Assembly: GCF_030028105.1 (NCBI RefSeq)
Contig: NC_092375.1
Location: 141,139,035 to 141,203,034 of the forward strand
Direction: 5' to 3'
From: Mobula birostris
Lineage: Eukaryota
Length of the DNA stretch: 64,000 nt
Below are positions 7,607-57,114 of this stretch, in pieces. The stretch's first letter is position 1, and every line of letters begins with the position of its first letter. Both the position numbers and the translations under genes were made by a program. The notes under the pieces are model-generated. The model was not told the origin of the DNA. It saw nothing but the letters and a program-made list of their open reading frames with translations, and did no database searches.

Positions 7607-10600
7607 TCAGTGCAGGGCTCTCGAGTCCTCATTTTGTTCCTGGAATGGAAAGATGAATAGATTTGTAATTTTCATCTGGACTGAGCTCACTCTAACATCA
7701 ATGTTCTGTCATTAGTTTTAATGATGATCACATCAGACACAAAGCTTTAGTTTATACTTACATTCGAAGGCTCCTCCATTGATAATTCTGTTGATTTGCT
7801 TTTCATCTGTTTTATGAGATAAAATTTTGCAGTATTAGAAATCATTTCTATGTACAAAGTCAAATGAGGTTTAGTTTGAAATTGGGTGTGTGAAATCACT
7901 TTAATTTCGGAACTGTAGGTTAGTGAGAAATCTACAGCAAACACCACTATCAATTTGAATTTCAGCAAAATATAAAGGCAATGGGACTCTAAGATTGAAT
8001 GTTACAAAGGATGGCATTGGATTGGAAAGGGTGCACAAAAGATTTATGGGAATGTTACTAAGTCTGGAGGGCTTTGGTTATAAGGAGAGGCTGGATAGGC
8101 TTGGAGTTGCTTCCGTTGACCATAGGAAGATGGATAAAGATGTAATTTAGATTTATAAAATTATAAGACGGAAAGCCAAAGTATTTTCCAGAGGGTAGGA
8201 GACTCTAAAACTGAAGAGCGCAAGTTTAAAGTCAGCGAGGAGAGATTTAGAAGTGATCTGAAGGGAATATTTTTTCACAGTGATGGTGGATTTATGGAAT
8301 GATCTGCCAGAGGAATTGGCAGAGGCAGGTACAATGATGGCACTTATAATGCATTTAGACAGCTCCATAGATCGGAAAAGTTTCAAGGGATATGGGTCAA
8401 AAGCAGGGAAATTTCAATAAGCTGATTTCGGCAACTTGATCAGCACAGATGAACTGAATCAAATGATCTGTTACTGCATTGTATATCCCTATGACTCTAT
8501 TAATCTAAGAGAGATGATTCTTTCACCAATTGGTCTTGACTGGGCTGACATATCTCAGTCTCTGTGCCAGTAATTATATACAATTAAATGAGGAAATTTA
8601 AGAGATGCTCCTTTCATGAAGCCACAGTTATATCTTTCTACAGACCATGATTGTCCCCTGGAGAGAGTGCCTTTTCTAGCTTTACTTCAATATTAAGTGA
8701 AGATCAAACTCAAATTCAGGCTGAAGTTGGGCATCATCAGGAATTGAATGGAGAATATTCTATAAAATTTGTGCATTTATATGCCCTCTCTGTCTATCTC
8801 TAGATCTGGGGTTCCCTACCTTTTTTATGCCATGGACCAATATTATTATGCAAGGAGTCCATGGGCCTCAGGTTGGGAACCCCTGCTCGAGATAGTCATT
8901 AATTAAGTTTACACAAATTAGGTTTCATCACTATATTATGGTTGAAAATCAATAGATAAAATTTCCAAGATTAGACTTACATCAGAAGGCTCTTCGACTG
9001 ATGTCACTTTTGACTTGCTGTCTACCTGCATGAAAAAAATCAATATTTATATACTTAGCATGTTTATTAATAAAGGTTTGTGGAGTAACCTTTGAACAAA
9101 TCTTTAATGATTGAATTAGAAATGACCTTAGATATATCAGGCTTTGAGATTCAGTACAGCAGTGGATAATTGCTCACCAAAGCAATTACGATCTGCAACA
9201 GCGATCAACATAGCTTGGATGTTGTGAGATTTGGGGTGGGGTGGGGTCAGAAGATAATTCAAGAAACAGTGTCATTCTCACCGACATTTGGTCTGTAATT
9301 GGTGAATGTTACAGACACTGCCCTCATGTCTAACACCCATTCTAGTTGATATCTAGATCATTTTATCCTTGAGAGAACAAACTCATTCTCTGTATTGGAG
9401 CCTCAACAATTTGCCTCTCAGCTCAACTTCCCCATAGGAATCAAATCACCGAATCCCTTTCTCAATGCACTGACCAAAGTAAATGGTTCTCTTTCCCTCT
9501 CTTCTAACATGGTCAAGTCCAAGATGTTAAACATTTTAACTTGCAATCAAGATCAAATAGATCATCAGCATTTTTTTCCATTCATACTCACATCAGCTGA
9601 ATCCTCAAGAGATGTCTCTTTTGATTTGTCTTTTTCCTGTATGGAAATAATATTTACATATATATTTAGTACAGGACAGTGAGAAATTTTGAAAATACAT
9701 AAACTGAAAAATTCCCAGCTTGCACAAGTATTAAATATTGAAATATAATGGAGTCTATGTTCACTCTGGGCTTTTCAGCAGCAAATGCAGCAGGTCATTG
9801 AGAAGGCAAATTGCCTTTATGCAAGAAGGCTTGAGAACAAGAGTAGTACAGTTGTTTCAAGCTCTGGTGAGGATTGTGTAGTTTTGGTCGGCTGATCTGA
9901 AAAAGGATATGCTTGAGAAAGAGGATGAAGCATGGTTCTGCCTGGGTAGAGTCTGGGATGGTGCATTTGGAACATGAGGAATAATCTCTATTATTTACAG
10001 CTTGGAAGAATGAGAGGTAATTGCCTTACAGTGAACAAAATTATGAGAGGTCTTGGCTAGTTAGAAAGGTGGGATATTTTGCCTATCTAAGGAGTTGAGA
10101 GCTTGGGTTGCAGTCTCAGGATAAGGGATTGGCCAATTGGAAATGTGGTGAGATGCAATCTCTTCACCAAGATGGTGAATTTTTGGAATTTGCTACCCCA
10201 CAGAGCTGTGGAGGCTCATTCACTGAGTTAATTCAAAACAGTAACTGGTGGATTGATGGATATTAAGGGAATCAAGAATTACAGTGTTACCATAGGAAAA
10301 TGGTTTGAGGTAGAAGTTAATATTCAATATTTTCTCAGTCTTCTCTCTCTCTCACCCACAGTCTGGAACAGGCCTATTATAAAGTAAGACCCTTGGTATT
10401 CTGACAGTTCAGTCAAGGTTTCACATCTTACTGAGAATCTGAAGGTAACATTTTCCAAATTAAACTTACGTTTAGAGATTCTTCTTCCAGTGAATTTTCT
10501 TCTGACTGGCTTTCGACCTACGTAAAAAAACATAAACATCCTAACATTAACACAGTAGGACAGAAAGCATAAATAGATGACCTCCAATAAATAGAAAACA

Positions 10601-13365
10601 TTAATAGTTTACCTCCAAAAAGTAGACAAGAATACTTAATGCTAAATAAAGGATTGTCAATCCTGACAATGCCGAATGAAGATCCTATGACCGATCATAA
10701 AATTGCAGAAGCCTCAATAAAAGCCCCAGTCTCTATAGTACACCAATGTTCAGAAAAGTGCCTGGCTAAGTGTCTGGTGTAGAGTCAATGGATGTTCCTA
10801 CAATAGGCGGCACAGCTCCGATTATCGTATTTTTTATTGAATCCGTGGTTCCCCTCCGGGAATCAATAGAACATGACTCCCATTGCTGCAAGTTTTACAG
10901 GTACTCCTCTTTCAGTCCTGTTCTACTGGTGGTCAGTTCCTCTTTAGTAGAGAATAAACTCAGCATGCTCTGAAGTCAAAGGTTACTAAAAACTCCATTA
11001 CCAACAACTGAGATCAACAAGAAAAAAAATCTGATGAATTATTAAGTAATACTCACATTTAAGGATATCAGTAAGATTGAAAGAGTGCAGAGGAGATTTA
11101 CTAGGATGTTGCTGGGTCTTCAGGAGTTGAGTTACAGGGAAAGATTGAACAGGTTAGGACTTTATTCCTTGCAGCGTAGAAGAATGAGGGGGGATTTGAT
11201 AGAAGTTTACAAAATCATGAGGCGTATTGACAGAGTAAATGTGAGAAGGCTCTTTCCACTTAGATTAGGAGAGATAAATACGAGAGGACATGGCTTTAGG
11301 GTGGAAGGGGAAAGGTTTAGGGGGAACATTAAGGGGAACTTCACTCAGAGAGTGGTGGGAGTGTGGAACGAGCTGCCATCTGACGTGGTAAATGCGGGCT
11401 CACTCTTAAGTTTTAAGAATAAGTTGGATAGATACATGGATGGGAGAGGTTTGGAGGGTTATGGACTGGGTGCAGGTCAATGGGACTAGTGGAATAAAGT
11501 TTTGGCACAGACTAGAAGGGCCGAATGGCCTGTTTTCTATGCTGTAGCATTCTATGGTTCAATGGTTCTACGTTAGAATCCTCACCCAGCACATCAGACC
11601 AGGATAATATGCCATCTCACCCACTATTTCTAATGAAGAGCTGAACATTTCATTGCTAGCAATTATAATCACTTCATTACTAACAACTGAGATCAACAAG
11701 AAAAAACATCTGCTGAAGTATTAATTAATACTCACATTTGGGGTTTCCTCTAGTGATGTCTCTTTTGATTTGGTTTGGGCCTGTAAGATAAAGATATTTA
11801 TATTTAGATCTTCAGCATACCTCACTAATATAATGTTTAGTGAATGATCTTGTGTTAGAAATCCCATTGACCAGACTGCCGATACTATACCTCAATTCTG
11901 GTTTCACTTGATTCTTTTGAGTCACTCTCACTGTCAACTGTCTTCAGACCGTCACACTCCACATCGACATCAGCTACCTTATCAGCAAAAAATTCCACAT
12001 GGCTTTTGCAAAACCCTTTCTCCTGTTGGAATGAAGCATAGTGCAAGGAAATTATTGATGATTCCAAGCAAGAATGTAAATCAAAGTGATTATGATCTAA
12101 CCCAATTCTTAGTCTTTCCTTCCATATCTATACTCATTTCTATGAAATAGGTTGTAATTAAAGCTCGTGTTTTAATGCTAATACATACGCGGACTTGTGT
12201 GATCTAAGATATTACTCTGGACTCACCGCAATGCTTTTAGAGCAGAAAGAGCAACTGGGATCATCAAATTCCTGCCCAGAATTCTTGGAGCAGACAGTTT
12301 CTTTCACAGAGAACGTTAAATCCATGCTGTAGGATAGTTTACCTGTGCGATATGTCTGAAGAAAGGAAAATAGTTTATTAGTGCATTGTTATGTTTGGAG
12401 CTCTTCCAATGGTCTGACAAAGAGCAGAGCTACACAGGGCTTTATTTCCAGCAGATAGTTACATTGACAGTGTCTGAGTCATCAGCCAAAATAGACAAGA
12501 GACTTAATTTGATTGATAGTAAAATTGCAACTTAAACCATCATGATAGGAATATCAGTTTGCAGGAAATCCTAATTATTGGTGGAAAATAACAAAGAAAA
12601 TTTGAAAACCTTTCAGGGACTTCCAGATCAATGAATGGTAGAACATCCAATCTTAATTCCAAAACATTGATCCAATCAGAGATATACAATTCAAATATTG
12701 ATTGAGAATTTAAGTTCCTAATCTGATATTCAGAGTAAGTTCTGCATGTAATGTAATATTCAGCTCCAATTTAGTACTTGGTTACCACCATATCTTAAAC
12801 ATAACCTTATACTTAAAATTGCACAGTTTGAGGCCACTTAGCCCATAAAGCCTACACTGGCTCTAAGCAAAACAATCCCATCAATTCCATTCCCCCTTTC
12901 CTAAAATACCCATAATACTGTATGCTATTGTTCCAACTATGTCAGCATCTCCCCTTTGATTTTTTTTTGCTGTTAACCTACTCTCAGGCTAATTTTTAGT
13001 AGCCTATTAATCTACACTCTGATGCATCCAAGGGCTGTGAAACACAATTCTCCAAGAACACACTTACATTTGTTACACCTCTTCTGGTGATACCACAGAG
13101 ATTGGTGATGTCGGAGATTTCATTCAGCTTATTAACTGAGGCTCTCAGAGCTTCCTTGGTGCTTGGCACTCCTGCAGAGAGAGAGGGAAATTTGTACAAG
13201 ACATTCTAACCAACTTCAGCAATTTTTTCTTGCACATGGGTGAAATATCACTGACTGAAGCTCAGTACCAATAACTCATTGCTCTCTAGGGTCCCACTCT
13301 CCCCAGTACTTACCTGAGCAGCAGAGAATCTGCACAGCAATGATGGCGAGCACGCAAGTTTTCAT
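7607..13365 (-). CDS. SPP2: Secreted phosphoprotein 2 (Spp24)-like, copy 1, 225 aa, with acidic S-x-E repeat tail
   Basis: All introns GT-AG. Exons: 13365-13314 MKTCVLAIIAVQILCCS/G; 13171-13068 VPSTKEALRASVNKLNEISDITNLCGITRRGVTN; 12355-12227 TYRTGKLSYSMDLTFSVKETVCSKNSGQEFDDPSCSFCSKSIA; 12022-11891 EKGFCKSHVEFFADKVADVDVECDGLKTVDSESDSKESSETRIE; 11780-11736 AQTKSKETSLEETPN; 10517-10470 VESQSEENSLEEESLN; 9636-9592 EKDKSKETSLEDSAD; 9025-8981 VDSKSKVTSVEEPSD; 7806-7762 MKSKSTELSMEEPSN; 7639-7607 EQNEDSRALH*. Matches remembered SPP2 motifs (CSG signal end, AL.ASV.K.N, L.FS..ET.C.K.SG..D...C.F, C-x17-C, Ser/acidic patch). Structure conserved in three copies. Confidence 0.9.
8806..8885. mobile_element. 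80-bp hAT-type MITE in intron 8 of copy 1
   Basis: TIRs CTGGGGTTCCCTACC and GGTTGGGAACCCCTG. 8-bp TSD ctctagat / ctcgagat. Absent from copies 2 and 3. Confidence 0.85.
10895..10969 (-). CDS. Candidate alternative terminal exon of copy 1 (SMLSLFSTKEELTTSRTGLKEEYL*)
   Basis: ttcag acceptor in phase 0 with exon 5. AATAAA at 10833-10838. Same frame open in copies 2 and 3. Confidence 0.62.
   Translation of the reverse strand, partial: SMLSLFSTKEELTTSRTGLKEEYL
11061..11570 (+). mobile_element. CR1 3' fragment in intron 5 of copy 1
   Basis: ORF 11085-11489 (QRRFTRM..SYRERL..RRRMRGDLIEVYKIM..TRGH..FTQRVVGVWNELP) with a tandem tail. Confidence 0.92.
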
Positions 13366-13452
13366 TCTGCCTTGTGTGGAACCAACTGGTTTCTCAGAAT
13401 GAAGGAAATGCTTCTCTCTCTCTTGATCTGCTTTCACTTTGCTGCTTCAGAC

Positions 13453-13458
13453 TTTATA
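13453..13458 (-). promoter_or_regulatory. TATA box of copy 1
   Basis: GGTGCAGGATATAAAG ~90 nt upstream of the ATG. The same context occurs in copy 2 (39050-39055) and copy 3 (57207-57212), with a Fox-type TGTTTGC just upstream in all three. Confidence 0.75.
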
Positions 13459-15190: not shown

Positions 15191-15206
15191 GAAGTAAGTG
15201 TTAGAT

Positions 15207-27994: not shown

Positions 27995-28123
27995 NNNNNN
28001 NNNNNNNNNNNNNNNNNNNNNNNNNNNNNNNNNNNNNNNNNNNNNNNNNNNNNNNNNNNNNNNNNNNNNNNNNNNNNNNNNNNNNNNNNNNNNNNNNNNN
28101 NNNNNNNNNNNNNNNNNNNNNNN
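27995..28123. other. Assembly gap (129 N)
   Basis: Run of N inside a minus-strand LINE 3' end. Confidence 1.
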
Positions 28124-36400: not shown

Positions 36401-38959
36401 TGGTCAATGAGGAATGAGGTGAAACTCAGATGGTGAATCTTTGGAATTCTCAACCCTGGAAAGCTGGGGAGCCTCAATCGCAAGTTCATCCAAAACAGGG
36501 TTGATGAATTGTTCGATTTTAAGGGAATCAGGGCTTACAGTGTTACGACAGGAAAATTGCTTTGAGGTAGAAGCTAATATTCAATATCTTCGCTGTCCTC
36601 TTTCACCCATTGTCTAGAACAGGCCTAGAATGAAGTAAGATCCTCAGACTCTATTCTGACAGATCAATCTAGGTTTCATATCTTATTGAGAAACTGGATA
36701 TCAAATCCCAAATTAAACTTACGTTTGAAGATATTTCCAGTGAAGTTTCCTCTGAACTGCTTTTCACCTGTATAAAAACACGTACATGTATATCATTAGT
36801 ACAAGGTATATTTAGTAAATCTGAAACAAATAATAGACCAGAATGTTGAATTATCAATGGAGAGTTATTAATCCTAACATTTCTGAATGATAATTCAATG
36901 AATTAGCGTTAGATTGCAGAAGCTTCAATAAAAATTATCTCTATACTACACTGATGTTCAAAATAAATGTCAGGAGCAGAATGAATGGATATTCCTACAA
37001 CAGTTGCTATAGGCATCATTGCCATCTGTTTTATTGAATCCATGGAAGGATTGGTACTTCGTGAATCTCAGTGATGAGAGTTTGTCAGACACTTCTCCTG
37101 TAGTCCCGTTCTGCTGATGCTCAGTTCATCTTCAGCAGAGAACAAACTCATCATGCACTGAAATCTAATATTAGAATCCCCTCCCTACACATCAGACTGG
37201 GACACATGCTGTCTCATCCACTATTCCTAACGGAGAACTTAACATTTCATTGAAAATAATTATAATCACTTCATCACGAACAATTGAGATCAACAAAAAA
37301 AATCTGATAAATTACTGATTAATACTCACATCTGAGGTTTCCTCAAGTGATTTTTCTTTTGATTTGCTTTGTGCCTGTAAGATAAAGATACTTATTTTCA
37401 GATCTTCAGCATACATAAACAATGAAATGTTCAGTAAACAATCTTGTGTTAGAAATTCCATTGCCCTGAATTGTATGAATGCAGTTACCTCGATACTGTT
37501 TTCATTTGATTCTGTTGAGTCACTCTCGCTGTCAACTGTCGTCAGACCGTCACACTCCACATCAACGTCAGCTACCTTATCAGCAAAAAATTCCACGTGG
37601 CTTTTGCAGAACCCTTTCTCCTGTTAGTATGAAGCAGAATGTAAGGAGATTATAAATAATTCCAAGCAAGACACAAAATCAAAATGATTATGCTCTAACT
37701 TAATTCTTAGCCTTTACTTTGATATAACCACATATGTATGGCCATTTCTATCAAACAGGTTGTAATTAAAGTTTGTATTTTGTTGCTAATACATACACGG
37801 ACTTGCATGATCTAAGATATAACTCTGGACTCACCGCAATGTTTTTATGGCGGAAAGAGCAACTGGGATCATCAAATTCCTGTCCAGAATTCTTGGAGCA
37901 GACAGTTTCTTTCACGGAGAATATTAAATCCACGCTGTAGGACAGTTTACCCGTACGATATGTCTTAAGAAAGGGAAGGATAATTGGTGAATTATTACCT
38001 CTGGTGTTTTTCCACTGGTCTGATAAAACTCAGAGTTACAGAGGCTTTAATTCCAGCAAATGGTTACAGTGGTAGCGTCTGAGCAGTCAACCAAAATGAA
38101 CAGGAGGATGACTTTGCCCAGTGGTAAAACTGTCACTTAAACCATCACAACAGGAATACTCAATTTGCATGAATCCATAATTATTGGAGGAAATTAACTA
38201 ACAAATTTGGAAAACTTCCAGTGACATCAAAATCAAAGATTGGCTGAACTTCCAAACTTAATTCCAAAGCTTTGGTCATATCAAGTTGCACAACTCAAAC
38301 ACTGAAGGAGAGTTAAAAAGCTGACCACTCTGTACACAATATAATATTCAGCTCCCGTTGAAAACTTAGATTCCATCTTATCTTAACGTTTATCTCATAC
38401 TTTGAATTATGCAGCTTGAGGCCACTCAGCCCTTCAGGCATATACTGGCTCCCAGGTGACCAATCCCATCAATTCCACTCTCCCTCTCATCAAATCCCCA
38501 TAATGTTGCAACTTACTCTCTCTATCACAAACATCATCTCTCCTTTCATTGGTTTTTTGCTGTTAAACTACTCTTAGGGTAAGTTTAAGTAGACAGTTAC
38601 CCTGCACTCAGACACATCAATAGTTTGTGAAACACAATTAGCCAAAGGCACACTTACATTTGCCACGCCTCTCCTGGTGATACCACAGAGGTTGGTGATC
38701 TCGGTGATTTCATTCAGCTTTATCACTGAGGCTCTCAGAGCTTCCTTGGTGCTTGGCACTCCTGTAGAGAGAGAGAGGGGAAGTCATACAATATGCATTC
38801 TAACAAACCACTGTGAATTCTTCTCACACCTGGGTGAAATGTCGTTGCTTGAAGCTCAGTACCAACAACTTCCTGCTCTCTGATTTCCCACTCTCCCCAG
38901 TACTTACCTGAGCAGTAGAGGATCTGCACTGCAGCAATGGCAAGCAGGAAAGTTTTCAT
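33427..38959 (-). CDS. SPP2: SPP2-like copy 2, 224 aa
   Basis: Exons: 38959-38908 MKTFLLAIAAVQILYCS/G; 38761-38658; 37963-37835 (..SVKETVCSKNSGQEFDDPSCSFRHKNIA); 37620-37489 (EKGFCKSHVEFFADKVADVDVECDGLTTVDSESDSTESNENSIE); 37374-37330 AQSKSKEKSLEETSD; 36767-36723 VKSSSEETSLEISSN; 35904-35860 EKDKSTESSLEDSAD; 35213-35169 VESKSNETSVEESSD; 33626-33582 MKSESTELSSEEPSN; 33459-33427 EQNEDSRSHH*. Frame intact, all introns GT-AG. Confidence 0.9.
34229..34820. mobile_element. Unclassified ~590-bp retroposon in intron 8 of copy 2
   Basis: Flanked by a 10-bp TSD gtgctg(a/g)cat. Empty site in copy 1 (~8545). Its right end survives in copy 3 (~50270-50310). Confidence 0.6.
37068..37157 (-). CDS. Candidate alternative terminal exon of copy 2 (CMMSLFSAEDELSISRTGLQEKCLTNSHH*)
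   Basis: tttcag acceptor, phase 0, AATAAA at 37030-37035. Same length and stop position as in copy 3. Confidence 0.65.
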   Translation of the reverse strand, partial: CMMSLFSAEDELSISRTGLQEKCLTNSHH

Positions 38960-39757
38960 TCTGGATTGTGTGGAATCAGCTAGTTTCTCACAGTGAAGGA
39001 ACTGCTTCTCTCTGTCTCTCGATCTGCCTTTACCACGCTGCCTTCAGTCTTTATATCCTGCACCTCCACCACATTCAAACACTAGCTCGTGTTTGCATAG
39101 CTTGCTGACCGTGGGTACCGGAACCAGATGAGAGGTGGGTCTAATTATGGGCAAGCTTCCTCCTAGTATCGTCATCATGTTTAGGTCTGGTGGGAAATTG
39201 AGTCAGTTCATGTTGCATTCCTTGGAATATGAAATAATAAATTTACAGAGGTGAAGAAACAATCTTCTCAAACTTGTACAAATTCACTTAACACTTGCAC
39301 TAATTTTCCTGATGATTTACCTACAGTGTACCAGAAATATGCTGGAAATACCAGCACACTGTTACAAGAACCCTTAGTGATAAATCCAAAGTATGTTGAG
39401 AGAAGTCTTGTATGTTTTTCATGTTCTACCAACGTTTACAGTGATATTGATGACATTATTAGAGGTAAATGAGTTTTCTGAGCAGTTGGGAGAGTTTGTG
39501 TGATTGGATGATTGAAATATAGAAGGCAGAAAATAAAGAAATTAAAAGGGTTAACTCAACATTGTGGGCCAGAAGGCCTGTAATGTGCTCTAATGTAATT
39601 TTGGAGACACAGTAGACTGCGGATGGTAGAAACCTAGACTACCATACAAAGGCATTGGAGAAACTCTGCAAGTCAGGCAGGATCTATGGTGGGAAATGGA
39701 CAGGCAAGATTTTGGTTTAAGTCTCTCATCTGGGCTGGAAATAAAGAGGGGAGGTAG

Positions 39758-48437: not shown

Positions 48438-48778
48438 GATACACTATCATCAAGGGACAGGTGAACATAATAACTGGATGAACTCCTGTAGGTCAGTGAC
48501 AAACAAAACAACTTCCATAAGCAATTCCGTGTATATACAATACTGTATTTATTACTTTATTTTGATCCACAATATATTCAACAATAATATACAACAAAGG
48601 ACAGAACATTTACAAATAATCAAATCTCCCATTTGCAACAAAATGTACAGTCAGGAGCTCCAGGCCCCTCAGTCTTGGACATGAGTGAGTACAGTACAAT
48701 TGTTAACATCTTGTAAATTCTGAATGAGGTCTTCTTGTGTTCACATTGAGTTCAGACTCTGTGGAGTTTCATTCATGG

Positions 48779-51700
48779 TTAGTGCTGGGCTCTCGAGTCC
48801 TCATTTTGTTCCTGGAATGGGAAGATGAATAAATTTGTAATTTTCAGCTCGATGGAGCTCACTCTGATGTCAATATTTTGTCATTAGTTTTAATAATGAT
48901 CACATCAGTCACAAAGCTTCAGTTTATACTTACATTTGAAGGTTCCTCCAGTGATAATTCCGTTGATTTGCTTTTCATCTGTTTTATGAGATAAAATCAG
49001 ATTTGCACATCAGTGATAGATCCACATCAGAAACTTCACAATCAATCTGAATTTCAGCAAAATATTAACGTAATGGGATTCTAAGATTGAGTAATACCAA
49101 GTATGCCATTATCTTGGAGAAGGTGAAAACAAGAATTATGAAGATATTACCAGTACTGGAGGGCTTGTGTTATAAGGAGAGGCTGGATAGGTGAGTTGAT
49201 TCCCTGGAGTGCAAGAAAGTATGGGAAGATAAAATTATGGGGTGAAAAGATATGGCAAATAGCCAAAGTAATTTTTTTTAGAGTAGAGGAATCTAAAATG
49301 AGAAAGCATAGGTTTAAAATGCAAGGGGAGAAATTCAAAAGTGATGTGACGGGCAACTATTTCAAACAGAGATGGTGGGTTTATGGAATGAACAGTCAGT
49401 AGAATCGGTAGAGACAGGTTGAATTGTGACATTTAAAATGCATTTGGACAGTTCCATAGATAAGAAAGATTTTTAAGAGATATGCCCTGGCTTAGTACTG
49501 GCTTGCATAACACACTTGAGGACCTTGAGGACCTGAGGAGAGCTAAGGTACCGGTGACCCCTGTTTCCATCCATGGGATCAGTGTGGACATGGTGGAGGA
49601 TTACAAATACCTGGGGATACAAATTGACAATAAACTGGACTGGTCAAGGAACACTGAGGCTGTCTACAAGAAGGGTCAGAGCCGTTTCTATTTCCTGAGG
49701 AGACTGAGGTCCTTTAACATCTGCCGGACGATGCTGAGGATGAGTCTGTGGTGGCCAGTGCGATCATGTTTGCTGTTGTGTGCTGGGGCAGCAGGCTGAG
49801 GGTAGCAGACAGCAACAGAATCAATAAACTCATTCGTAAGGCCAGTGATGCTGTGGGGATGGAACTGGACTCTCTCATGGTGGTGTCTGGAAAGAGGATG
49901 CTGTCTAAGTTGCATGCCATCTTGGACAATGTCTCCCATCCACTACATAATGTACTGGGTGGGCACAGGAGTACATTCAGCCAGAGACTCATTCCACCGA
50001 GATGCAACACAGAGCGTTACTGGAAGTCATTCCTGCCTGTGACCATCAAACTTTACAACTCCTCCCTTGGAGGGTCAGACACCCTGAGCCATTAGGCTGG
50101 TCCCGGACTTATTTCATAATTTACTGGCATAATTTACATATTACTATTTAACTATTTATGGTTTTATTACTATTTATTATTTATGGTGCAACTGTAACAA
50201 AAACCAATTTCCCCCGGGATCAATACAGTATGACTATGACTATGATTATGACACAGACAGCTGGGACACAACTTTCGTGTTCAACCCGACCAACGAAGGT
50301 CTCAGTGCTGATATCTACACCATACACTTCACCTCATAGTTATAGTCAATTAAATGTGAGAAATGTTGTGGATCCCCCATTCATGAAACTACTAGAAATA
50401 TCAATCCACAGACCATGATTGTCCTCAGGAGAGAGTGTCCTTTCAAATTCTATTTCAAAATTTAGAGAAGAACAAACTCACACTCAGGCTAATGATGGGC
50501 ATCCTCAGGACATGCACAGAGAATTTGTGCATTAATATGCTATTCTCTCCCTGATCTCTGTAGTCATTTAACTATGTTTGCCCAAAATAGGTTTTATCTG
50601 TATATTATGGTTGAAAATCAATAGATGAAATTTCCAAGATTAGACTTACATCAGAAGGCTCCTCGACTGATGTCTCTTTTGACTTGCTCTCTACCTGCAT
50701 GAAAAGATCAATATTTATATGCTCAGCATGTTAATTAATGAAAGTTTGTGAAGTAACCTGAGAACGAAACTAGAAATATCTTGATTATTAATTTATTACT
50801 GCAGTGGAGAAGTCCTCGCCAGAAGAATTACATTCTGTATAATGATCAACATAGCCGGGAAAATGTGAGGTGTGGAGTGTCTGGAGATGAATTGGGGAAA
50901 ATGTCACTCTCACCCAATTAATTGGCATTGCATGTATTGAAGCTGCTCTGCACCATCACTTGGACTCTGTAATTGGTGAGTATTAGAGACTTTGCCTTCA
51001 CGCCTAGCACCCAATCCAGCTCGCTTTATCCTTGAGGGGAAGCAAACTCATTCTCTATATTGGAACCCCTCAGTCAAACTTCCCAACAGGAGTCAAACAA
51101 CATATTCCCTTTCTCAATGCACTGACCTAATGTTAGTGGAGCAGATTCAATGGGCAAAATGGCATAATTCTTCTCCTTTGTCTTGTATCTTATGGTCTAA
51201 ATTGCCCTCTCTCCTATTCTGACAAAGCCGAATTGAATATGTTCAACGTATTTACTTAGCGACGAGGTCAAAAAGATCATCTGAATTTTTTTAGTTATAC
51301 TCACATCAGCTGAGTCTTCAAGAGATGTCTCTTTTGATTTGTCCTTTTCCTGTATGGAAGTAATATTTATATGTTTAGTACAAGACAGTGAAGAATTTTG
51401 ATGATATATAAACTGAAAAATCACAGTTTGCACAATTATTAAATATTGAAATATAATGTAGACTTCGTTCACTCTGGGCATTTCAGCAGCAAATGCAGCA
51501 GGCCATTAGGAAAGCAGATTATTTTTATAGCAAGAGGACTTGAAAAGAAGAGTACTACAATTGTATCGAGCCCGGTGAGGGTTGTGTAATTCTGGTTGCT
51601 TATCTGAAGAAGGATATGCTTGAGACAGAGGATATAACAAAGTTATACTAGTATAGTGCCCATGAATGTGGATCTGTCACATGAGGAAAGATTAAGTATG

Positions 51701-54700
51701 ATAGACTATTCATTACAGATAGGAAGAATGAGATGTGATTGCCTAACCATAAGCAAAATTGTGAGAGGGTTTGATTGGATATCGGGGAAGGGTTTTCACC
51801 TGTCTAAGGAGATGAGAGCTTGACTCATAGTATCAATATAAGAGCTTGGTCAATGAGGAATGAGGTGAAACTCAGATGGTGAATCTTTGGAATTCACTAC
51901 CCCCAGAGAGCTGTGGAGGCTCAATTGCAAGTTCATTCAAAACAGAGATTGGTGGATTGTAGGATATTAAGGGAATCAAGGCTTACAGTTTTATTATAGG
52001 AAAATGGTTTGAAGTGGGCGCTAGCTAATATTCAATATTCTCTCTCAACCCCGCTGTCTGGAACAGGGCAAGAATTAATTAAGATCCCTAGACTCTATTC
52101 TGACAGATCAATCTAGGTTTCACATCTTATTGAGAAACTGAAGATATCAACTCCCAAATTAGACTTACATTTGAAAATAATTCCAGTGAAGTTTCTTCTG
52201 ATTTGCTTTTGCCTATATAAAATATGTACATTTATAGCATTAGTACGAGGTATATTTAGTAAATCTAAAGCACTATCACCGAATAATAGACCAGAATGCT
52301 GAATTATGAATGGAGCTATTAATCCTGACATTTCTGAATGATAATCCCATGAACTAGCGTTAGATTGCAGAAGCTTCAATAAAAATTCTCTCTATACTAC
52401 ACTGATACTCAAAAAAAATGTCAGGAGCAGATTGAATGGATATTCTGACAATAGGTGAAACAGGCATCGTTACCATTTGTTTTATTGAATCCATGGAAGG
52501 ATTGGTACTTAATGACTCTCAGTGGTGAGAGTTTGTCATACACTTCTCTTGTAGTTCTCTTCTGCCGATGCTCAGTTCATCTTCAACAGAGAACAAACTC
52601 CTCATGCACTGAAACCTAATATTATGATCCCCTCCCTACACATCAGACTAGGACAAGACCACAGACCACAACATCATAATACATAGGAGCAGTATTAGGC
52701 CATCTAGCCTATCGAGTTTGCTCCGCCATTCAATCATGGCTGATTTTTTTTTCTATCTCCTTCTCAACCCCAGTTCCCAGCCTTCTCCACGTACCCTTTG
52801 GTGCCACATCCAATCAATAACCTATCAATCTCTGCCTTAAATACACCCAACGACCTGGCCTCCACAACTGCATGTGGCAACAAATTCCACAATTTCACCA
52901 CACTTTGGCTAAAGAAATTTTTCCGCATCTGCTTTGAAAGGGCGCCCCTCTATCTTGAGGCTGTGCACTCTTGTCCTAGACTCTCCCACCATGGGAACCA
53001 TCCTTTCCACATCTTCTCTGTCTAAGCTTTTCAACATTCGAAAGGTTTCAATGTGATCCTCCTTCATCCTTCTGAATTCCAGCGACTGCATGTATAACCC
53101 CTTCATTCCTGGAATCATCCTTGTGAACCTCCTCTGGACCCTCTCCAATGCCAGCACATCTTTTTTAAGATGAGGGGCCCAAAACCTTTCACAATCATCA
53201 AGGTGAGGCCTCACCAGTGCCTAATAAAGCCTCAGCATCAAAACCTTGCTCTTTTATTCTAGACCTCTTGAAATGAATGCTAACATGGCATTTGCCTTCC
53301 TCACCACCAACTCAACCTGCAAATTAATCTTAAGAGTGGACTCCCAAGGACTCCCAAGTCCCTCTGCATCTCAGATTCCTGGATTTTCTCCTCATTTAGA
53401 AAATAACCCACACATTTATTTCTACTACCAAAGTGCATGACCATGCATTTTCCAACATTGTATTTCATTTGCCACTTTCTTGCCCATTCTCCTAATCTGT
53501 CTAAGTCCTTCTGCTTCCTACCTGTTTCCTCAACATTACCTGCCCCTCCACTAATCTTTCTATCATCTGCAAACTTGTCAACAAAGCCATCTATTTCATC
53601 ATCTAAATCATTTATATACAGCATAAAAAGAAATAGTCCCAACACCGACCTCTGCGGAACACCACTAGTCACTGGCAGCCAACCAGAAAAGGACCCTTTT
53701 ATTCCCACTTGCAGCCTCCTTCCAATCAGCCAATGCTCTAACCATGTTAGTAACTTTCCTCTAGTACCATGGACTCTTAATTTGGTAAGCAGCCTCATGT
53801 GTGGCACCTTGTCAACGACCTTCTGAAAGTCCGAATGCACAAAATTCCCTTTATCTATCCTACTTGTAACCTCTTCAAAGAATTCTAACAGGTTCACCAG
53901 GCAGGATTTTCCATGAAGGAAACCATGCTGACTTTGTATTATCTTGTCCTGTGTCACCAAGTACTCCATCACCTCGTCCTTAATAACTAACTCTAACATC
54001 TTCCCAACCACTGAGGTCAATCTAACTGGTCTATAATTTCCTTTCTGCTGCTTTCCTCCTTTCTTAAAGAGTGGAATAACATTTGCAATTTTCCAGTCCT
54101 CTGGCACCATGCCAGAGTCCAATAATTTTTGAAAGATCATTTCTAATGCCACCACAATCTCTAACGCAACCTCTTTCAGAACCCTAGGGTGCAGTTCATC
54201 TGGTCCAGGTGACTTATGTACCTTTAGGTTTTCCAACTTTTTGAGCACCTTCTCTCTTGTAACAGTAACTGCACCCACTTCTCTCCCTTCACACACTACA
54301 ACATCAGGCATACTGCTAGTGTCTTCCACAGTAAAGACTGACGCAAAATACTCATTCAATTCAGCAGCCATCTCCTTGTCCCCCGTTATTATTTCTCTTG
54401 CCTCATTTTCTAGCAATCCTGTATCCATTCTTATTTCTCCTTTATTTTTAACTTGAAAAATCTTTTACTATCCACTTTGATATTACTTGCTAGCTTGCTT
54501 TCATATTTCATCTTTTCCCTTCTAATGATTTTTATAGTTGCTTTCTGTAAGTTTTTAAAAACTTCCCAATCCTCTATCTTCTGACTAATTTTTGCTTTGT
54601 TGTATGCCCTTTCATTTGCTTTTATAATAGCTTTGACTTCCCACGTCAGCTACGGTTGTACTATTTTACTATGTGTGTATTTCTTCATTTTTGGAATATA

Positions 54701-57114
54701 CATGTCCTGCACCTTTCTCATTTTTCCCAGAAACGCACACCATTGTGATTCTACTGACATCTCTGCCAGCGGCTCCTTCCAGTTTACTTTTGCCATCTTC
54801 TCTCTCATACCACTGTAATTTCCCTTACTCCACTGAAATACTGCTACATCACACTTCACTTTCTCATTACCAAATTTCAAGTTGAACACAATCATATTGT
54901 GATCACTGGTTCCTAAGGGTTCTTTTACATTAACCTCCCTACTCGCCTCCAGTTCATTACATAACACCCAATCCAGTATAGCTGATCCCCTAGGAGGCTC
55001 AACAACAAACTGCTCTAAAAAGCTATCTCTTAGGCATTCAACAGACTCACTCCCCTGAGATCCATTACTAACCTGATTTTCCCAATCAACCTGTATGTTA
55101 AAATCTCCCATGACTACCATAACATGCTGTCTCACCCACTATTTCTAATGGAGAACTTAAAATTTCATTGCGAAGAATTTTAATCATTTCATCGTGAACA
55201 ATTGAGTTCAACAAGAAAAAAATCTGATAAATTACTGATTAATACTCACATCTGAGGTTCCTTCAAGTGATGTTTCTTTTGATTTGGGTTGCGCCTGTAA
55301 GATAAAGATATTTATTTTTAGATCTTCAGCATACATAAACAACGAAATGTTCAGTAAAGGATCTTCTGTTAGAAATTCCATTGCCCTGAACTGTATGAAT
55401 GCAGTTACCTCAATACTGTTTTCATTTGTTTCTGTTGAGTCACTCTCGCTGTCAGCTGTCGTCAGACCGTCACACTCCACTTCAACATCAGCTACCTTAT
55501 CAGCAAAAAATTCCACATGGCTTTTGCAAAACCCTTTCTCCTGTTAGAATGAAACATAATGTAAGGAAATTATTCATGATTCCAAGCAAGACAATAAATC
55601 AACATGATTATGATCTAACTCAATTCTTAGCCTTTCCTTTATTATAACTACATATGTATGTATGGTCATTTCTATGAAATGGGTTGTAATTAAAGCCTGT
55701 ATTTTGATGTTAAAACATACAAGGACTTGCATGATCTAATATAACTCTGGACTCACCGCAATGTTTTTATGGCGGAAGGAGCAGCTGGGATCATCAAATT
55801 CCTGTCCAGAATTCTTGGAGCAGACAGTTTCTTTCACGGAAAACGTTAAATCCATGCTGTAGGACAGTTTACCCGTACGATATGTCTTAAGAAAGGAAAA
55901 GAGATCATTGGTGAATTTTTACGTCTGGTATTCTTCCACGGGTCTGAGAAAACGCAGAGTTACAGGGGCTCTACTTCCAGCCGATGGTTTCACTGGTCAT
56001 GTCTGAGTTTTTTTTTGTATGTCATATCCGGAGTTTCTCCGGTTAGCAGACAATTTCCATCCACGTCTCTGACGTAGCGGGGAACCGCGTACGAGGCAAG
56101 TTACAGCAATGGTTTGCCATTGCCTTCTGCCAGGTGAGTTTCCAAAGAGATCACCAGCTCCTAACCCAGCGCGGATAGAAAGCGTACAGGGGAGCCGGCT
56201 GGAGCTGGATTCGAACTCAGAACCTTCCGTCCTGAAGTCCGATGCTGATGCCACTACGCCACCAGCCAGGTCATGCCTGAGTAATCAACCAAAATGGATA
56301 AGAGAATTACTTTGCCCAATGGTAAAACTGTCACTTAAACCATCATGATAGGGATATTCAATTTGCATGAATTCGTAATTATTGAAGGAAATTAACTGAC
56401 AAATTTGAGAAAATTTTCAGTGACTTGCAAATCAAAGACTGGTAGAACATCCAACCTTAATTCTGAAACTCTGGTCCAATCAAATTTCCACAACTCAAAC
56501 ACTGATAAAATGTATCTCACAATTAGTTTTATGCAGTTTGTGGCCAGTCAGCCCTTTAGACTTATACTGGCTCCCAGCTGACCAATCCCATCAATCCCAC
56601 TCTCGCTCTCATCAAATCCCCATAATGTTGCAATTTATTCTCCTTATCACAGAACATTATCTCTCCTTCCAGCATCTGCAGAATTCCTCGTGTTTACTCT
56701 CCTTTGATTTGTTTTTTGATGTTAAACTATTCTTAGGGTAGGTTTAAGTAGACAATTACCCTGCACTCAGACATATCCATAGTTTGTGAAGCACAATTAG
56801 CCAAAGGCACACTTACATTTGTCACGCCTCTCCTGGTGATACCACAGAGGTTGGTGATCTCGGTGATTTCATTCAGCTTTATTACTGAAGCTCTCAGAGC
56901 TTCCTTGGTGCTTGGCACTCCTGCAGAGAGAGAGGGGAAGTCATACAAGGCATCCCAAAAAATCTCTGTGAATTCTTCTCACACCTGGGTGAAATGTTGT
57001 TGATTGAACTTCAGTACAAACAATTATCTGCTCTCTGATTTTCCTTTCTCCCCAATACTTACCTGAGCAGTAGAGGATCTGCACAGCAGTGATGGCAAGC
57101 AAGAAAGTTTTCAT
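48779..57114 (-). CDS. SPP2: SPP2-like copy 3; exon 6 is 44 nt in this assembly (frameshift if included)
   Basis: Exons: 57114-57063 MKTFLLAITAVQILYCS/G; 56920-56817; 55885-55757; 55540-55409; 55294-55250 AQPKSKETSLEGTSD; 52212-52169 (44 nt, xKSKSEETSLELFSN in the ancestral frame); 51349-51305 EKDKSKETSLEDSAD; 50694-50650 VESKSKETSVEEPSD; 48978-48934 MKSKSTELSLEEPSN; 48811-48779 EQNEDSRAQH*. Confidence 0.85.
49525..50250 (+). mobile_element. Rex1/Babar LINE 3' fragment in intron 8 of copy 3
   Basis: YKYLGIQIDNKLDWSRNTEAVYKKGQSRFYFLRRLRSFNIC; VVCWGS..RINKLIRKA; SHPLH; (CTATGA)n tail. Confidence 0.9.
52519..52608 (-). CDS. Candidate alternative terminal exon of copy 3 (CMRSLFSVEDELSIGRRELQEKCMTNSHH*)
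   Basis: tttcag acceptor, phase 0, AATAAA at 52481-52486. Confidence 0.65.
   Translation of the reverse strand, partial: CMRSLFSVEDELSIGRRELQEKCMTNSHH
52657..55122 (-). mobile_element. Long CR1 ORF2 fragment in intron 5 of copy 3
   Basis: VMGDFN..SDHNMI; 375-aa RT ORF at 53301-54428 (KSPGPDELHPRVLKE, NYRPV, QHGF, GVPQ, FADD). Confidence 0.95.
56009..56268 (-). mobile_element. tRNA-derived SINE with RTE-type 3' part
   Basis: A box TGGCGTAGTGG, B box GAGTTCGAATCC, GAAGGCAATGGCAAACCA motif, poly(A), 14-bp TSD ggtcatg(t/c)ctgagt. Confidence 0.88.

What the first reader, a model, noticed from the sequence alone, without database searches (positions are those of the whole stretch)
7607..57114. 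Tandemly amplified SPP2 (Spp24) family hidden in micro-exons
Seen: three 10-exon paralogues, each with TATA box, signal peptide, cystatin/cathelin-type domain and poly(A) signal. Domain exons are almost invariant while introns have diverged and gained copy-specific TEs, which points to purifying selection. Knowledge: SPP2 is a single-copy, liver-made, mineral- and BMP-binding phosphoprotein in mammals. Inference: a lineage-specific expansion suited to high-dose secretion of a phosphoprotein. I do not know of a description of it but cannot exclude one.
Basis: partly seen in the sequence, partly recalled or inferred. Interest (0 to 1): 0.85.

Follow-up and report, generated by a model that had tools for sequence, protein, structure and literature searches.

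The report
Tandem SPP2 genes in manta ray
Three neighbouring copies of the secreted phosphoprotein gene SPP2 are really there in what is almost certainly the giant manta ray genome, but they are already annotated and this gene-family expansion in sharks and rays was published in 2026.

Summary
Three minus-strand paralogues (13365-7607, 38959-33427, 57114-48779) each have a TATA box, a signal-peptide exon, three cystatin-like exons, five 45-nt micro-exons, a short last exon and AATAAA. All 27 introns are GT-AG. Two details fail. Exon 6 of copy 3 is 44 nt and frame-broken. Exons are 89-93% identical between copies, not "almost invariant".

The SPP2 reading is right. Exon 3 alone hits Pfam Spp-24 in 3 of 3 copies. 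Full-length database proteins identical to the exons score 39.6-44.9 bits, against 17-18 for cathelicidin. Those proteins are Mobula birostris RefSeq entries: two "secreted phosphoprotein 24-like" and one "uncharacterized protein". Domain dN/dS is 0.18-0.23.

Contigs of a probable RNA run cover exons only and join six of nine predicted junctions. They come from a paralogue outside the window.

The N gap (27995-28123) is intergenic and its flanks are collinear with the other spacers.

It is not new. BMC Biol 2026 (PMC13188829) describes tandem spp2 expansion in cartilaginous fishes, including Mobula hypostoma, with SxE-rich tails and expression in mineralising cartilage, not liver.

This scan holds two other notes on this window and no SPP2 note elsewhere.

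The parts
7607..13365 (-). Copy 1 (c1), ATG to stop, 10 exons. Equals RefSeq XP_072115847.1 from exon 2 onward.
13453..13458 (-). c1 TATAAA, 93 nt before the ATG
   Evidence: conserved in all three copies
13314..13365 (-). c1 exon 1: ATG plus 17-residue hydrophobic leader; ends in phase 1
   Evidence: Not used by the RefSeq model of c1. The M. hypostoma orthologue P0080 starts with a near-identical leader.
13068..13171 (-). c1 exon 2 (104 nt): start of the cystatin-like domain
12227..12355 (-). c1 exon 3 (129 nt): core of the Spp-24 domain
   Evidence: Spp-24 28.3 bits, cathelicidin 16.1
11891..12022 (-). c1 exon 4 (132 nt): end of the domain and start of the Ser/Glu-rich tail
11736..11780 (-). 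c1 exon 5: 45-nt phase-0 micro-exon
10470..10517 (-). c1 exon 6: 48-nt phase-0 micro-exon
9592..9636 (-). c1 exon 7: 45-nt micro-exon
8981..9025 (-). c1 exon 8: 45-nt micro-exon
7762..7806 (-). c1 exon 9: 45-nt micro-exon
7607..7639 (-). c1 exon 10 coding part, stop TGA at 7609-7607
7375..7380 (-). c1 AATAAA, 227 nt after the stop
33427..38959 (-). Copy 2 (c2), 10 exons. Equals RefSeq XP_072115692.1 (224 aa) exon for exon.
39050..39055 (-). c2 TATAAA, 96 nt before the ATG
38908..38959 (-). c2 exon 1 (signal peptide)
38658..38761 (-). c2 exon 2
   Evidence: An X21 contig joins it to exon 3 (record 6).
37835..37963 (-). c2 exon 3
   Evidence: Spp-24 25.0 bits. X21 contigs join it to exons 2 and 4 (records 4 and 6).
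37489..37620 (-). c2 exon 4
37330..37374 (-). c2 exon 5 (45 nt)
36723..36767 (-). c2 exon 6 (45 nt)
35860..35904 (-). c2 exon 7 (45 nt)
35169..35213 (-). c2 exon 8 (45 nt)
33582..33626 (-). c2 exon 9 (45 nt)
33427..33459 (-). c2 exon 10 coding part, stop TAA
33197..33210 (-). c2: two AATAAA, 217 and 225 nt after the stop
   Evidence: An X21 contig covers the 3' UTR 33206-33422 (record 1).
48779..57114 (-). Copy 3 (c3). RefSeq XP_072115693.1 (194 aa) uses E1-E4 and E7-E10.
57207..57212 (-). c3 TATAAA, 98 nt before the ATG
57063..57114 (-). c3 exon 1 (signal peptide)
56817..56920 (-). c3 exon 2
55757..55885 (-). c3 exon 3
   Evidence: Spp-24 29.8 bits; query
55409..55540 (-). c3 exon 4
55250..55294 (-). 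c3 exon 5: intact 45 nt with AG/GT, but absent from the RefSeq protein
52169..52212 (-). c3 exon 6 remnant: 44 nt, frame-broken, absent from the RefSeq protein
51305..51349 (-). c3 exon 7
50650..50694 (-). c3 exon 8
48934..48978 (-). c3 exon 9
48779..48811 (-). c3 exon 10 coding part, stop TAA
48548..48561 (-). c3: two AATAAA, 218 and 226 nt after the stop
52663..55090 (-). Copy-specific LINE fragment in c3 intron 5 (RVT_1 ORF 53301-54428; endonuclease-like ORF 54650-55135). About 72% identical to a second fragment at 42463-44910.
27995..28123 (.). Assembly gap (129 N) in the c1-c2 spacer, outside every exon

Best explanation
The window holds three tandem, head-to-tail members of the chondrichthyan SPP2 (secreted phosphoprotein 24) family. 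It is almost certainly from the giant manta ray, Mobula birostris, and is part of a larger array of at least seven such genes on one chromosome record.

Each gene makes a secreted protein of about 194-225 residues:
- a signal peptide (exon 1);
- one cystatin-like Spp-24 domain with four family-invariant cysteines plus a fifth (exons 2-4);
- a disordered, strongly acidic tail made of 15-residue modules, each encoded by one 45-nt phase-0 exon and carrying up to four S-x-E motifs (two in most).

Shown here: gene structure, family membership, purifying selection, splicing of family transcripts, and orthologues of the copies in a second Mobula species.

Inferred, from the named paper on catshark spp2.2/spp2.3 and from the S-x-E consensus of the Fam20C kinase: the tails are phosphorylated in the secretory pathway and bind calcium phosphate. 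The proteins then act in or on mineralising (tessellated) cartilage rather than as a liver-made plasma protein, and the tandem copies mainly raise or diversify dosage.

Copy 3 is losing modules: exon 6 is broken and exons 5 and 6 are left out of the annotated protein.
For: Structure: 27 of 27 introns are GT-AG and 29 of 30 exons are in frame. TATA and AATAAA are present in 3 of 3 copies.

Family: exon 3 alone gives Spp-24 at 28.3/25.0/29.8 bits (cut-off 26), against cathelicidin at 16.1/17.4/18.6 (cut-off 21). The full-length database proteins give Spp-24 at 39.6/44.9/40.1 bits, against cathelicidin at 17.4-18.3. phmmer of exon 3 against 1.84 billion proteins found 18 hits at E<=0.001. Ten of the first eleven were looked up, and all ten are cartilaginous-fish proteins that NCBI or UniRef name secreted phosphoprotein 24(-like); the eleventh, a 101-aa fragment, was not looked up. 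The two next hits that I fetched have cathelicidin-type repeats by my reading, at E 1e-6 or weaker.

Identity: exon translations are found exactly in M. birostris XP_072115692.1 (10 of 10 exons), XP_072115693.1 (8 of 10) and XP_072115847.1 (9 of 10).

Selection: domain dN/dS is 0.18-0.23 and 0.22-0.32 over all exons but E6. Exons are 89-93% and introns 73-82% identical.

Fold: in the AF2 model, residues 20-120 have 10-residue block-mean pLDDT of 67-91 and the tail is under 50. The best Foldseek PDB matches are chemerin (6.6e-4), cathelin-like domains and cystatins.

Tail: 12, 17 and 9 S-x-E motifs in c1, c2 and c3.

Expression: X21 contigs lie on exon-bearing bins and are absent from 12 intron or flank bins. 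They join E2/E3, E3/E4, E5/E6, E6/E7, E7/E8 and E8/E9 at the predicted borders. No such joints are listed for the two DNA runs.

Age: c1 pairs with M. hypostoma P0080 (SH-aLRT 99) and c2 with P0163 (88). c3 sits in a four-row group with M. hypostoma proteins (95). All three sit in a 23-row clade of stingray and devil-ray sequences only (97).

Function by homology: PMC13188829, sections 6, 7 and 10.
Against: No tissue is known for X21, and the tool itself labels it 'RNA? (probably DNA)'.

Its contigs differ from c2. Of the 13 X21 differences that one search listed (most were not shown), 4 match none of c1-c3. So they prove splicing of a paralogue, not of these three copies.

The second RNA-guess run (X22, another species) shows no exon joints and almost no exon cover.

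E1/E2, E4/E5 and E9/E10 joints were not among those listed (197 joints were not shown).

Phosphorylation, mineral binding and cartilage expression are untested in any ray here.

Assignment to the paper's spp2.3 clade rests on copy-number pattern and tree position, not on the paper's own labels (figures are not held and supplements are closed).

The RefSeq model of c1 has no signal peptide.

Confidence: 0.88

Rival explanations
1. The genes are cathelicidin-type host-defence precursors: a cathelin-like pro-domain followed by a processed effector peptide. They would not be SPP2.
For: Cathelicidin is the second Pfam hit (16-19 bits). Cathelin-like domains of protegrin and LL-37 are among the best structural matches (TM-score by target 0.50-0.59). 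Proteins with cathelicidin-type repeats (my reading of their sequences) appear at E 1e-6 to 6e-6.
Against: Every cathelicidin score is below Pfam's cut-off of 21, and 10-27 bits below Spp-24 on the same stretch. The tail is acidic (25-31 Glu, 13-16 Asp against 6 Arg), not a cationic peptide. There are ten exons, not four (the four-exon cathelicidin structure is recalled). The ten closest database relatives that were looked up are all named SPP24(-like) by NCBI or UniRef.
Confidence: 0.03
2. The triplication is an assembly artefact, such as haplotigs or a mis-joined scaffold at the N gap, and the genome has one copy.
For: An N gap lies between c1 and c2. No raw long reads could be laid; all runs were kept as contigs.
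Against: The copies differ by 18-27% in introns and 7-11% in exons, far beyond allelic divergence. They also carry different TE insertions. c1 and c2 each pair with a M. hypostoma protein from an independent assembly, and c3 groups with M. hypostoma proteins. 43-45% of c2's sampled 31-mers occur in runs of a second organism and 82-86% in runs of organism A. The gap flanks are collinear with the two other spacers.
Confidence: 0.02
3. The genes are real SPP2 members but work as in mammals: made in liver or another soft tissue and circulating as calciprotein-particle components that inhibit ectopic mineralisation, not as cartilage matrix proteins.
For: Mammalian SPP2 is liver-made and part of fetuin-mineral complexes (PMC13188829, section 10, which cites the primary work). 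The paper itself notes that many SxE sites could inhibit mineralisation. No tissue information exists here for Mobula (runs are coded).
Against: In catshark, liver TPM is 0.00-0.22 for all spp2.2 and spp2.3 copies, against 71-2,708 in Meckel's cartilage, chondrocranium and vertebrae. Thornback-ray jaw cartilage also expresses its spp2.3 copies (PMC13188829, Table 2 and section 10).
Confidence: 0.1
4. Copy 3, and perhaps copy 1, is a decaying pseudogene, so fewer than three copies in the window are functional.
For: c3 exon 6 is frame-broken, and the annotated protein also drops the intact exon 5. A 2.4-kb LINE fragment sits in intron 5. The M. hypostoma counterpart P0162 carries c3-type E5 and an intact E6, and then has residues found in no exon model here, which I read as read-through into the intron. 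The RefSeq model of c1 lacks the signal peptide.
Against: Skipping 45-nt phase-0 exons keeps the frame. c3's remaining 8 exons are intact, with dN/dS of 0.18-0.23 in the domain against c1 and c2. c1's signal-peptide exon, TATA box and splice donor are intact and conserved in M. hypostoma.
Confidence: 0.12

Closest known systems
Chondrichthyan spp2 family, especially the tandem spp2.3 duplicates (Debiais-Thibaud et al., BMC Biol 2026, PMC13188829)
   Same: Signal peptide, one cystatin-like domain with conserved cysteines, many SxE motifs in the C-terminal part, no arginine-rich end, and tandem copies at one locus that differ between species. The paper's data set includes the congener Mobula hypostoma. 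c1 and c2 pair directly with M. hypostoma proteins and c3 groups with them.
   Different: M. birostris itself is not in the paper's species list. The paper's main text never uses the word 'exon', so the 45-nt micro-exon build of the tail and the exon decay in copy 3 are not discussed there; the supplements were not seen. Clade label 2.3 for these copies is my inference.
Mammalian and bony-vertebrate SPP2 / Spp24 (Pfam PF07448)
   Same: Pfam domain above the cut-off, size of about 200 residues, secreted, and a serine-rich phosphorylatable region after the cystatin-like domain.
   Different: It is single-copy and liver-expressed in bony vertebrates, with an arginine-rich C-terminus (paper, sections 7 and 10). 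Here there are several tandem copies, an acidic modular SxE tail, and only 6 Arg.
Cathelicidin precursors (cathelin-like domain, PF00666)
   Same: Same cystatin-superfamily fold and a similar cysteine pattern. They are the second-best Pfam and structural matches.
   Different: Scores are below Pfam's cut-off. There is no cationic C-terminal peptide, and the exon number differs.
SCPP genes and caseins of bony vertebrates, and the elasmobranch scpp gene (Mol Biol Evol 2022, PMC9122587; search listing only)
   Same: A secreted acidic phosphoprotein whose disordered part carries S-x-E sites and is built from short phase-0 exons that can be gained, lost or skipped without breaking the frame. The description of SCPP exon structure is recalled.
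   Different: SCPPs have no cystatin-like domain and derive from SPARC-like genes (recalled). Here the tail is attached to an SPP2 domain, so this is a resemblance in how it works, not membership.
Fetuin-A, HRG and kininogen (type-3 cystatins)
   Same: Cystatin-like fold. Fetuin-A is Fam20C-phosphorylated and binds mineral (paper, section 10). HRG N2 and fetuin-B are among the weak structural matches.
   Different: Those proteins have two or more cystatin domains and are much longer. There is one domain here, and no Pfam hit to them at E<=0.1.

Membership tests
SPP2 / Spp-24 (PF07448) | Spp-24 cystatin-like domain above Pfam's gathering score | tested here: met
   Full-length proteins identical to the window's exons score 39.6, 44.9 and 40.1 bits against a cut-off of 26. 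Exon 3 alone scores 28.3, 25.0 and 29.8, so 2 of 3 are above the cut-off on one exon.
SPP2 / Spp-24 (PF07448) | Four conserved cysteines in the domain | tested here: met
   C74, C87, C100 and C118 (P0057 numbering) are invariant in 44 of 44 aligned family members. C43 is invariant too. c1 has one extra Cys.
SPP2 / Spp-24 (PF07448) | N-terminal signal peptide (secreted) | tested here: inconclusive
   Exon 1 encodes Met-Lys, a run of about 13 mostly hydrophobic residues, then small residues. It is modelled as helix 2-15 and is nearly invariant in the family. No signal-peptide predictor was on hand. The RefSeq model of c1 lacks it.
SPP2 / Spp-24 (PF07448) | Serine-rich, phosphorylatable region after the domain | tested here: met
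   27-42 Ser and 9-17 S-x-E motifs, all after the domain. Phosphorylation itself was not tested.
SPP2 / Spp-24 (PF07448) | Cystatin-superfamily fold | tested here: met
   The model has one helix on an antiparallel sheet, with 10-residue block-mean pLDDT of 67-91 for residues 20-120. The top PDB matches are chemerin, cathelin-like domains and cystatins, but only 1 match has E<=0.001.
SPP2 / Spp-24 (PF07448) | Arginine-rich C-terminal region | tested here: not met
   There are 6 Arg in the whole protein and an acidic end. The paper reports the same absence for catshark spp2.2/2.3, so the feature defines bony-vertebrate SPP2 and not the chondrichthyan clades.
SPP2 / Spp-24 (PF07448) | Conserved locus (sh3bp4/arl4c on one side, nme9/vps8/cops8 on the other) | not testable with these tools
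Chondrichthyan spp2.3 clade (PMC13188829) | Falls in the multi-copy, species-specifically duplicated clade, sister to single-copy spp2.2 | tested here: inconclusive
   c1-c3 sit in a many-copies-per-species batoid clade, separate from a one-per-species clade of 6 rows (quick tree, 61 of 163 held proteins, midpoint root). The paper's clade labels could not be mapped: the figure is not held and supplements are closed.
Cathelicidin (PF00666) | Cathelin domain above the gathering score, plus a cationic C-terminal peptide | tested here: not met
   Scores are 16.1-18.6 bits against a cut-off of 21, and the tail is acidic.
SCPP family | No globular domain; descent from SPARC-like genes; short phase-0 exons with SxE | tested here: not met
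   Only the last feature is present. The proteins carry a cystatin-like domain. Descent was not tested.

The most novel reading that the evidence does not exclude
The SxE tail of elasmobranch SPP2 proteins is a cassette of interchangeable 45-nt phase-0 exons, each a 15-residue phospho-module. It grows, shrinks and is alternatively used by whole modules.

Supporting observations:
- 35 of 120 family proteins have lengths on one 15-residue ladder (164/179/194/209/224).
- Copy 3 is caught losing modules. Exon 6 carries a frame-breaking 1-nt loss in M. birostris, while the M. hypostoma counterpart has an intact exon 6 followed by what looks like read-through into the intron.
- An exon-10-like terminal exon with its own AATAAA sits in intron 5.

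On this reading cartilaginous fishes built an SCPP/casein-like, exon-modular mineral-binding tail on an SPP2 scaffold, in parallel with bony vertebrates. The one paper on the family does not mention exons in its main text, and a three-of-four-term search found nothing else.
Probability: 0.4. Interest if true: 0.4.

Novelty: already known. Interest (0 to 1): 0.2.

Why it matters
SPP2 expansion is currently the best candidate for a cartilage-mineralisation gene family specific to sharks and rays, which have few or no SCPP genes. That story is already in print, and these manta genes are already in RefSeq, so this finding adds a checked, exon-level description of three copies in one more species.

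Points that may be useful to annotators and to the authors of the family study:
- The c1 RefSeq model probably has the wrong first exon; the signal-peptide exon at 13365-13314 is intact.
- c3 carries a frame-broken exon 6.
- The tail is built from 45-nt phase-0 exon modules, which explains the 15-residue length ladder in the family.

Tried and rejected
- Plus-strand reading: rejected. All splice signals, the ATGs and the stops are on the minus strand.
- A first guess for the exon 3 acceptor, 15 nt further in, gave a stop in frame. The acceptor at 12356/12355, behind a pyrimidine tract, fits in all three copies and matches the RefSeq proteins.
- Pfam on exons 2 and 4 alone: 0 of 6 hits even at E<=10.
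- PDB sequence search with P0057: 0 matches at E<=10.
- The bacterial promoter/terminator scan found nothing and does not apply to a vertebrate gene. TATA and AATAAA were located by pattern instead.
- tblastn of seven M. birostris family proteins against the window found no further SPP2 exons outside c1-c3. It found only the upstream exon of the c1 RefSeq model and 5'-leader similarity, so the long c1-c2 spacer hides no fourth copy.
- The search of earlier findings by words found no SPP2 note elsewhere in the genome.
- X22, a guessed RNA run of another organism, gave no support for expression.
- Mapping catshark XM numbers from the paper to XP numbers by a constant offset was considered and dropped as unverifiable.
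- The paper's supplements (synteny figure S4, alignments, probe tables) were not seen. They may hold the M. hypostoma copy count, clade labels or exon structures.

The joined step was left out. Searches were run exon by exon and dN/dS counts were summed per exon. The split codon at the E1/E2 border and exon 6 were left out of the dN/dS counts. For full-length work I used database proteins returned by the tools (P0057, P0051, P0090).

Full report
**What is in the window.**
A self-comparison and a three-way alignment show a unit present three times in tandem. Within each unit about ten short blocks are better conserved than their surroundings. These blocks carry reverse-complemented splice signals, so the genes lie on the minus strand. 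Its end, 57114, is the A of copy 3's ATG.

The three genes are:
- c1, 13365-7607;
- c2, 38959-33427;
- c3, 57114-48779.

ATG-to-ATG spacing is 25,594 and 18,155 nt.

**Gene structure.**
All 27 introns begin with GT and end with AG. Exon 1 (52 nt, ending in phase 1) encodes a 17-residue hydrophobic leader. Exons 2-4 (104, 129 and 132 nt) encode the globular part. Exons 5-9 are 45-nt phase-0 micro-exons; exon 6 of c1 is 48 nt. Each encodes a 15-residue Ser/Glu/Lys-rich module. Exon 10 encodes ten residues and the stop. TATAAA lies 93-98 nt before each ATG and AATAAA 217-227 nt after each stop.

One exception: exon 6 of c3 is 44 nt and breaks the frame. So 29 of 30 exons are in frame.

**The assembly gap.**
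The only N run is 27995-28123. It lies in the spacer between c1 and c2, 14,630 nt from c1's ATG and 5,304 nt from c2's stop, and touches no exon. Its left flank (27659-27912) matches 42064-42315 and 61470-61703. Its right flank (28200-28364 and 28207-28693) matches 42297-42461 and 61707-62173. In both other spacers these stretches are contiguous. Order and orientation across the gap are therefore as expected for continuous sequence. The amount missing is unknown, and reading frame is not an issue.

**Family.**
Searched exon by exon, exon 3 alone matches Pfam Spp-24 in 3 of 3 copies, at 28.3, 25.0 and 29.8 bits against a cut-off of 26. Cathelicidin follows at 16.1-18.6 bits, below its cut-off of 21. 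Exons 2 and 4 alone match nothing, 0 of 6.

phmmer with c3's exon 3 against 1.84 billion representative proteins gave 18 hits at E<=0.001. Ten of the first eleven were looked up, and all ten are cartilaginous-fish proteins that NCBI or UniRef name 'secreted phosphoprotein 24(-like)'. They come from Mobula, skates, catsharks, a bamboo shark, a sevengill shark and the elephant shark. The eleventh hit, a 101-aa fragment, was not looked up. The next two hits that I fetched have cathelicidin-type repeats by my reading, at E 1e-6 or weaker.

A word-indexed search with the M. hypostoma hit P0004 returned 130 relatives. The 120 listed include many copies per elasmobranch species, and nearly all carry PF07448.

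**Identity of the genes.**
Per-exon BLAST against these proteins, followed by exact string look-ups, shows that the window's exon translations occur letter for letter in Mobula birostris RefSeq proteins:
- c2 = XP_072115692.1 (224 aa), 10 of 10 exons;
- c3 = XP_072115693.1 (194 aa), 8 of 10 exons, with E5 and E6 absent;
- c1 = XP_072115847.1 (286 aa, 'uncharacterized protein'), 9 of 10 exons.

In the c1 model the signal-peptide exon is replaced by 79 other residues, 72 of which map to 14715-14500. The window is therefore almost certainly M. birostris.

At least four more family members lie on the same 198-Mb record: XP_072115845.1, XP_072115846.1, XP_072115848.1 and XP_072118270.1. None of them is in the window.

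On the full-length proteins Spp-24 scores 39.6-44.9 bits, against 17.4-18.3 for cathelicidin.

**Fold and composition.**
An AlphaFold2 model of P0057, built with a 44-sequence family alignment, has a confident helix-on-sheet domain. Residues 20-120 have 10-residue block-mean pLDDT of 67-91, and the tail is disordered (pLDDT under 50 for 125-217). Foldseek against the PDB gives chemerin first (6.6e-4), then cathelin-like domains of protegrin and LL-37, cystatins, HRG N2 and fetuin-B. All except the first have E above 0.03. A sequence search of the PDB found nothing.

Five cysteines of the mature protein are invariant in 44 of 44 family members. The proteins carry 12 (c1), 17 (c2) and 9 (c3) S-x-E motifs, all after the domain, with 25-31 Glu against 6 Arg.

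**Selection and age.**
Exons are 88.7-92.9% identical between copies and introns 73-82%. By Nei-Gojobori counts summed per exon, domain dN/dS is 0.18-0.23 (Fisher p 6e-5 to 4e-4). It is 0.22-0.32 over all exons but E6. The tail is less uniform at 0.16-0.59, and one pair is not significant. dS is about 0.25 for c1 against the others and 0.13-0.18 for c2 against c3.

The tree was a quick IQ-TREE run on 61 of the 163 proteins held. It included all Mobula, Hypanus, Hemitrygon, Pristis and Narcine rows, some skate rows, three catshark rows, two Heptranchias rows and one elephant-shark row. Most shark rows were left out. In it:
- c1 pairs with M. hypostoma P0080 (SH-aLRT 99);
- c2 pairs with P0163 (88);
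- c3 falls in a four-row group with M. hypostoma P0162 and P0070 and M. birostris P0082 (95);
- all three sit in a 23-row clade made only of devil-ray and stingray sequences (97).

The duplications therefore predate the split of the two Mobula species. The c1 lineage probably predates the split from Hypanus.

**Expression.**
One search for runs, using c2 (33200-39199), found:
- four DNA-type runs of organism A holding 82-86% of the sampled words (possibly the source sample);
- four runs of organism B holding 43-45%;
- smaller shares in six more organisms;
- four small runs guessed to be RNA.

Names are coded. Laid at 88% likeness, the contigs of X21 have depth in bins that hold exons or high-copy repeats and none in 12 intron or flank bins. 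X21 is from the same sample as organism A's DNA, is guessed to be RNA, and is flagged by the tool as 'probably DNA'. Its contigs join the stretch exactly at, or within a few letters of, the predicted borders of E2/E3, E3/E4, E5/E6, E6/E7, E7/E8 and E8/E9. The DNA runs X5 and X9 show none of these joints.

The X21 letters are not c2's. Of the 13 X21 differences that one search listed (most differences were not shown), 8 match both c1 and c3, 1 matches c3 only, and 4 match none. Its exon-6 piece is of the 48-nt c1 type but differs from c1 by two synonymous letters. These contigs therefore show that family members with this exon structure are spliced as predicted. They most likely come from a paralogue outside the window.

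E1/E2, E4/E5 and E9/E10 were not among the joints listed (197 were not shown). X22, a guessed RNA run of organism B, gives no support. Contigs cannot give copy number.

**What is known.**
The full-text search found one directly relevant paper: Debiais-Thibaud et al., BMC Biol 2026;24:121 (PMC13188829). I read its abstract, sections 6, 7 and 10, and passages from the methods. It reports the following.
- spp2 is single-copy in bony vertebrates but tandemly duplicated in cartilaginous fishes at a conserved locus.
- There are four clades: spp2.1, spp2.2, spp2.3 and spp2.Like.
- spp2.3 has been duplicated independently and repeatedly in elasmobranchs, giving seven copies in catshark and fifteen or more in thorny skate.
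- The proteins keep the signal peptide and the cystatin-like domain with four cysteines, and accumulate SxE motifs.
- Catshark spp2.2 and spp2.3 copies are expressed in mineralising chondrocytes and essentially not in liver.
- Dosage is one proposed reason for the copies.

Mobula hypostoma is among its genomes for both phylogeny and synteny. M. birostris is not named. The word 'exon' does not occur in its main text. Two further searches found no other paper on the subject.

**Verdict.**
However, the genes are already annotated and the phenomenon is published, including for the sister species. By the paper's nomenclature these copies most likely belong to the multi-copy spp2.3 clade. That is an inference from tree pattern, since the labels could not be mapped.

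The mechanism I commit to has three steps, all inferred and none shown here: secretion, Fam20C-type phosphorylation of the modular SxE tail, and calcium-phosphate binding in mineralising cartilage. The inference rests on the paper's catshark data and on the known S-x-E consensus of Fam20C.

What may still be new is the exon-level picture. The tail is a cassette of 45-nt phase-0 modules, and 35 of 120 family proteins have lengths on one 15-residue ladder. Exon 6 of copy 3 is broken in M. birostris. In the M. hypostoma counterpart P0162 it is intact but followed by what looks like read-through into the intron.

Noticed in passing
window 14500-14715 (-) and 13314-13365 (-): The RefSeq protein of copy 1 (XP_072115847.1, 'uncharacterized protein') takes residues 8-79 from an upstream exon at 14715-14500 instead of the intact signal-peptide exon 1. 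The flanking sequence at 14801-15160 is repeated at 25090-25408 and 58204-58475. The M. hypostoma orthologue uses the signal-peptide exon. This is probably a mis-annotated or repeat-driven first exon.
   Followed up: partly
window 7400-7761; 33220-33581; 48570-48933: The 3' UTR and intron 9 are 88-96% identical between copies. That is more than most introns (73-86%) and more than several coding micro-exons. The cause could be a conserved 3' UTR function or local gene conversion.
   Followed up: no
window 37068-37097 (-), AATAAA at 37030-37035 (-): Inside intron 5 of copy 2, an AG acceptor is followed by a 30-nt open frame that ends like exon 10 (His-His-stop), with its own AATAAA about 35 nt further on (read). 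No X21 joint listed uses it.
   Followed up: partly
window 21055-25064: Two 856-nt direct repeats (21055-21910 and 24219-25064, 95.6% identical) flank a minus-strand ORF with SCAN and zinc-knuckle (gag-like) domains at 22824-23831. This is an LTR-retrotransposon remnant in the c1-c2 spacer and accounts for much of that spacer's extra length.
   Followed up: partly
window 42463-44910 and 52663-55090: There are two LINE fragments with reverse-transcriptase ORFs, 72% identical to each other. One is in the c2-c3 spacer and one in intron 5 of copy 3.
   Followed up: partly
window 34200-34799 and 35600-35799: Summed contig depth is 25,000-92,000 in the two DNA runs, against tens elsewhere (table 2). 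These are very high-copy repeats in introns 8 and 7 of copy 2. The first lies in a stretch with no counterpart in copy 1.
   Followed up: no
window 33200-36800 (laid contigs of X21): The spliced contigs come from a family member that is none of c1-c3. Of the 13 X21 differences that one search listed (most were not shown), 4 match no window copy. It has a 48-nt c1-type exon 6 with two synonymous changes, and exon 7 and 8 ends that differ from every copy in the window. None of the seven M. birostris proteins I held contains this combination, so the array may hold unannotated copies.
   Followed up: partly
window 1-6900 and 62000-64000: The stretch before copy 1's 3' end (605-817, 5139-5827) matches the last 1 kb of the window (62993-63916). 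This suggests that the array continues beyond the right end of the window.
   Followed up: no
protein P0162 (M. hypostoma) against window 52169-52212: The M. hypostoma counterpart of copy 3 has an intact exon-6 module followed by residues that match no exon model here, which I read as read-through into the intron. In M. birostris the same exon has lost one base. The same module appears impaired in different ways in the two species.
   Followed up: partly
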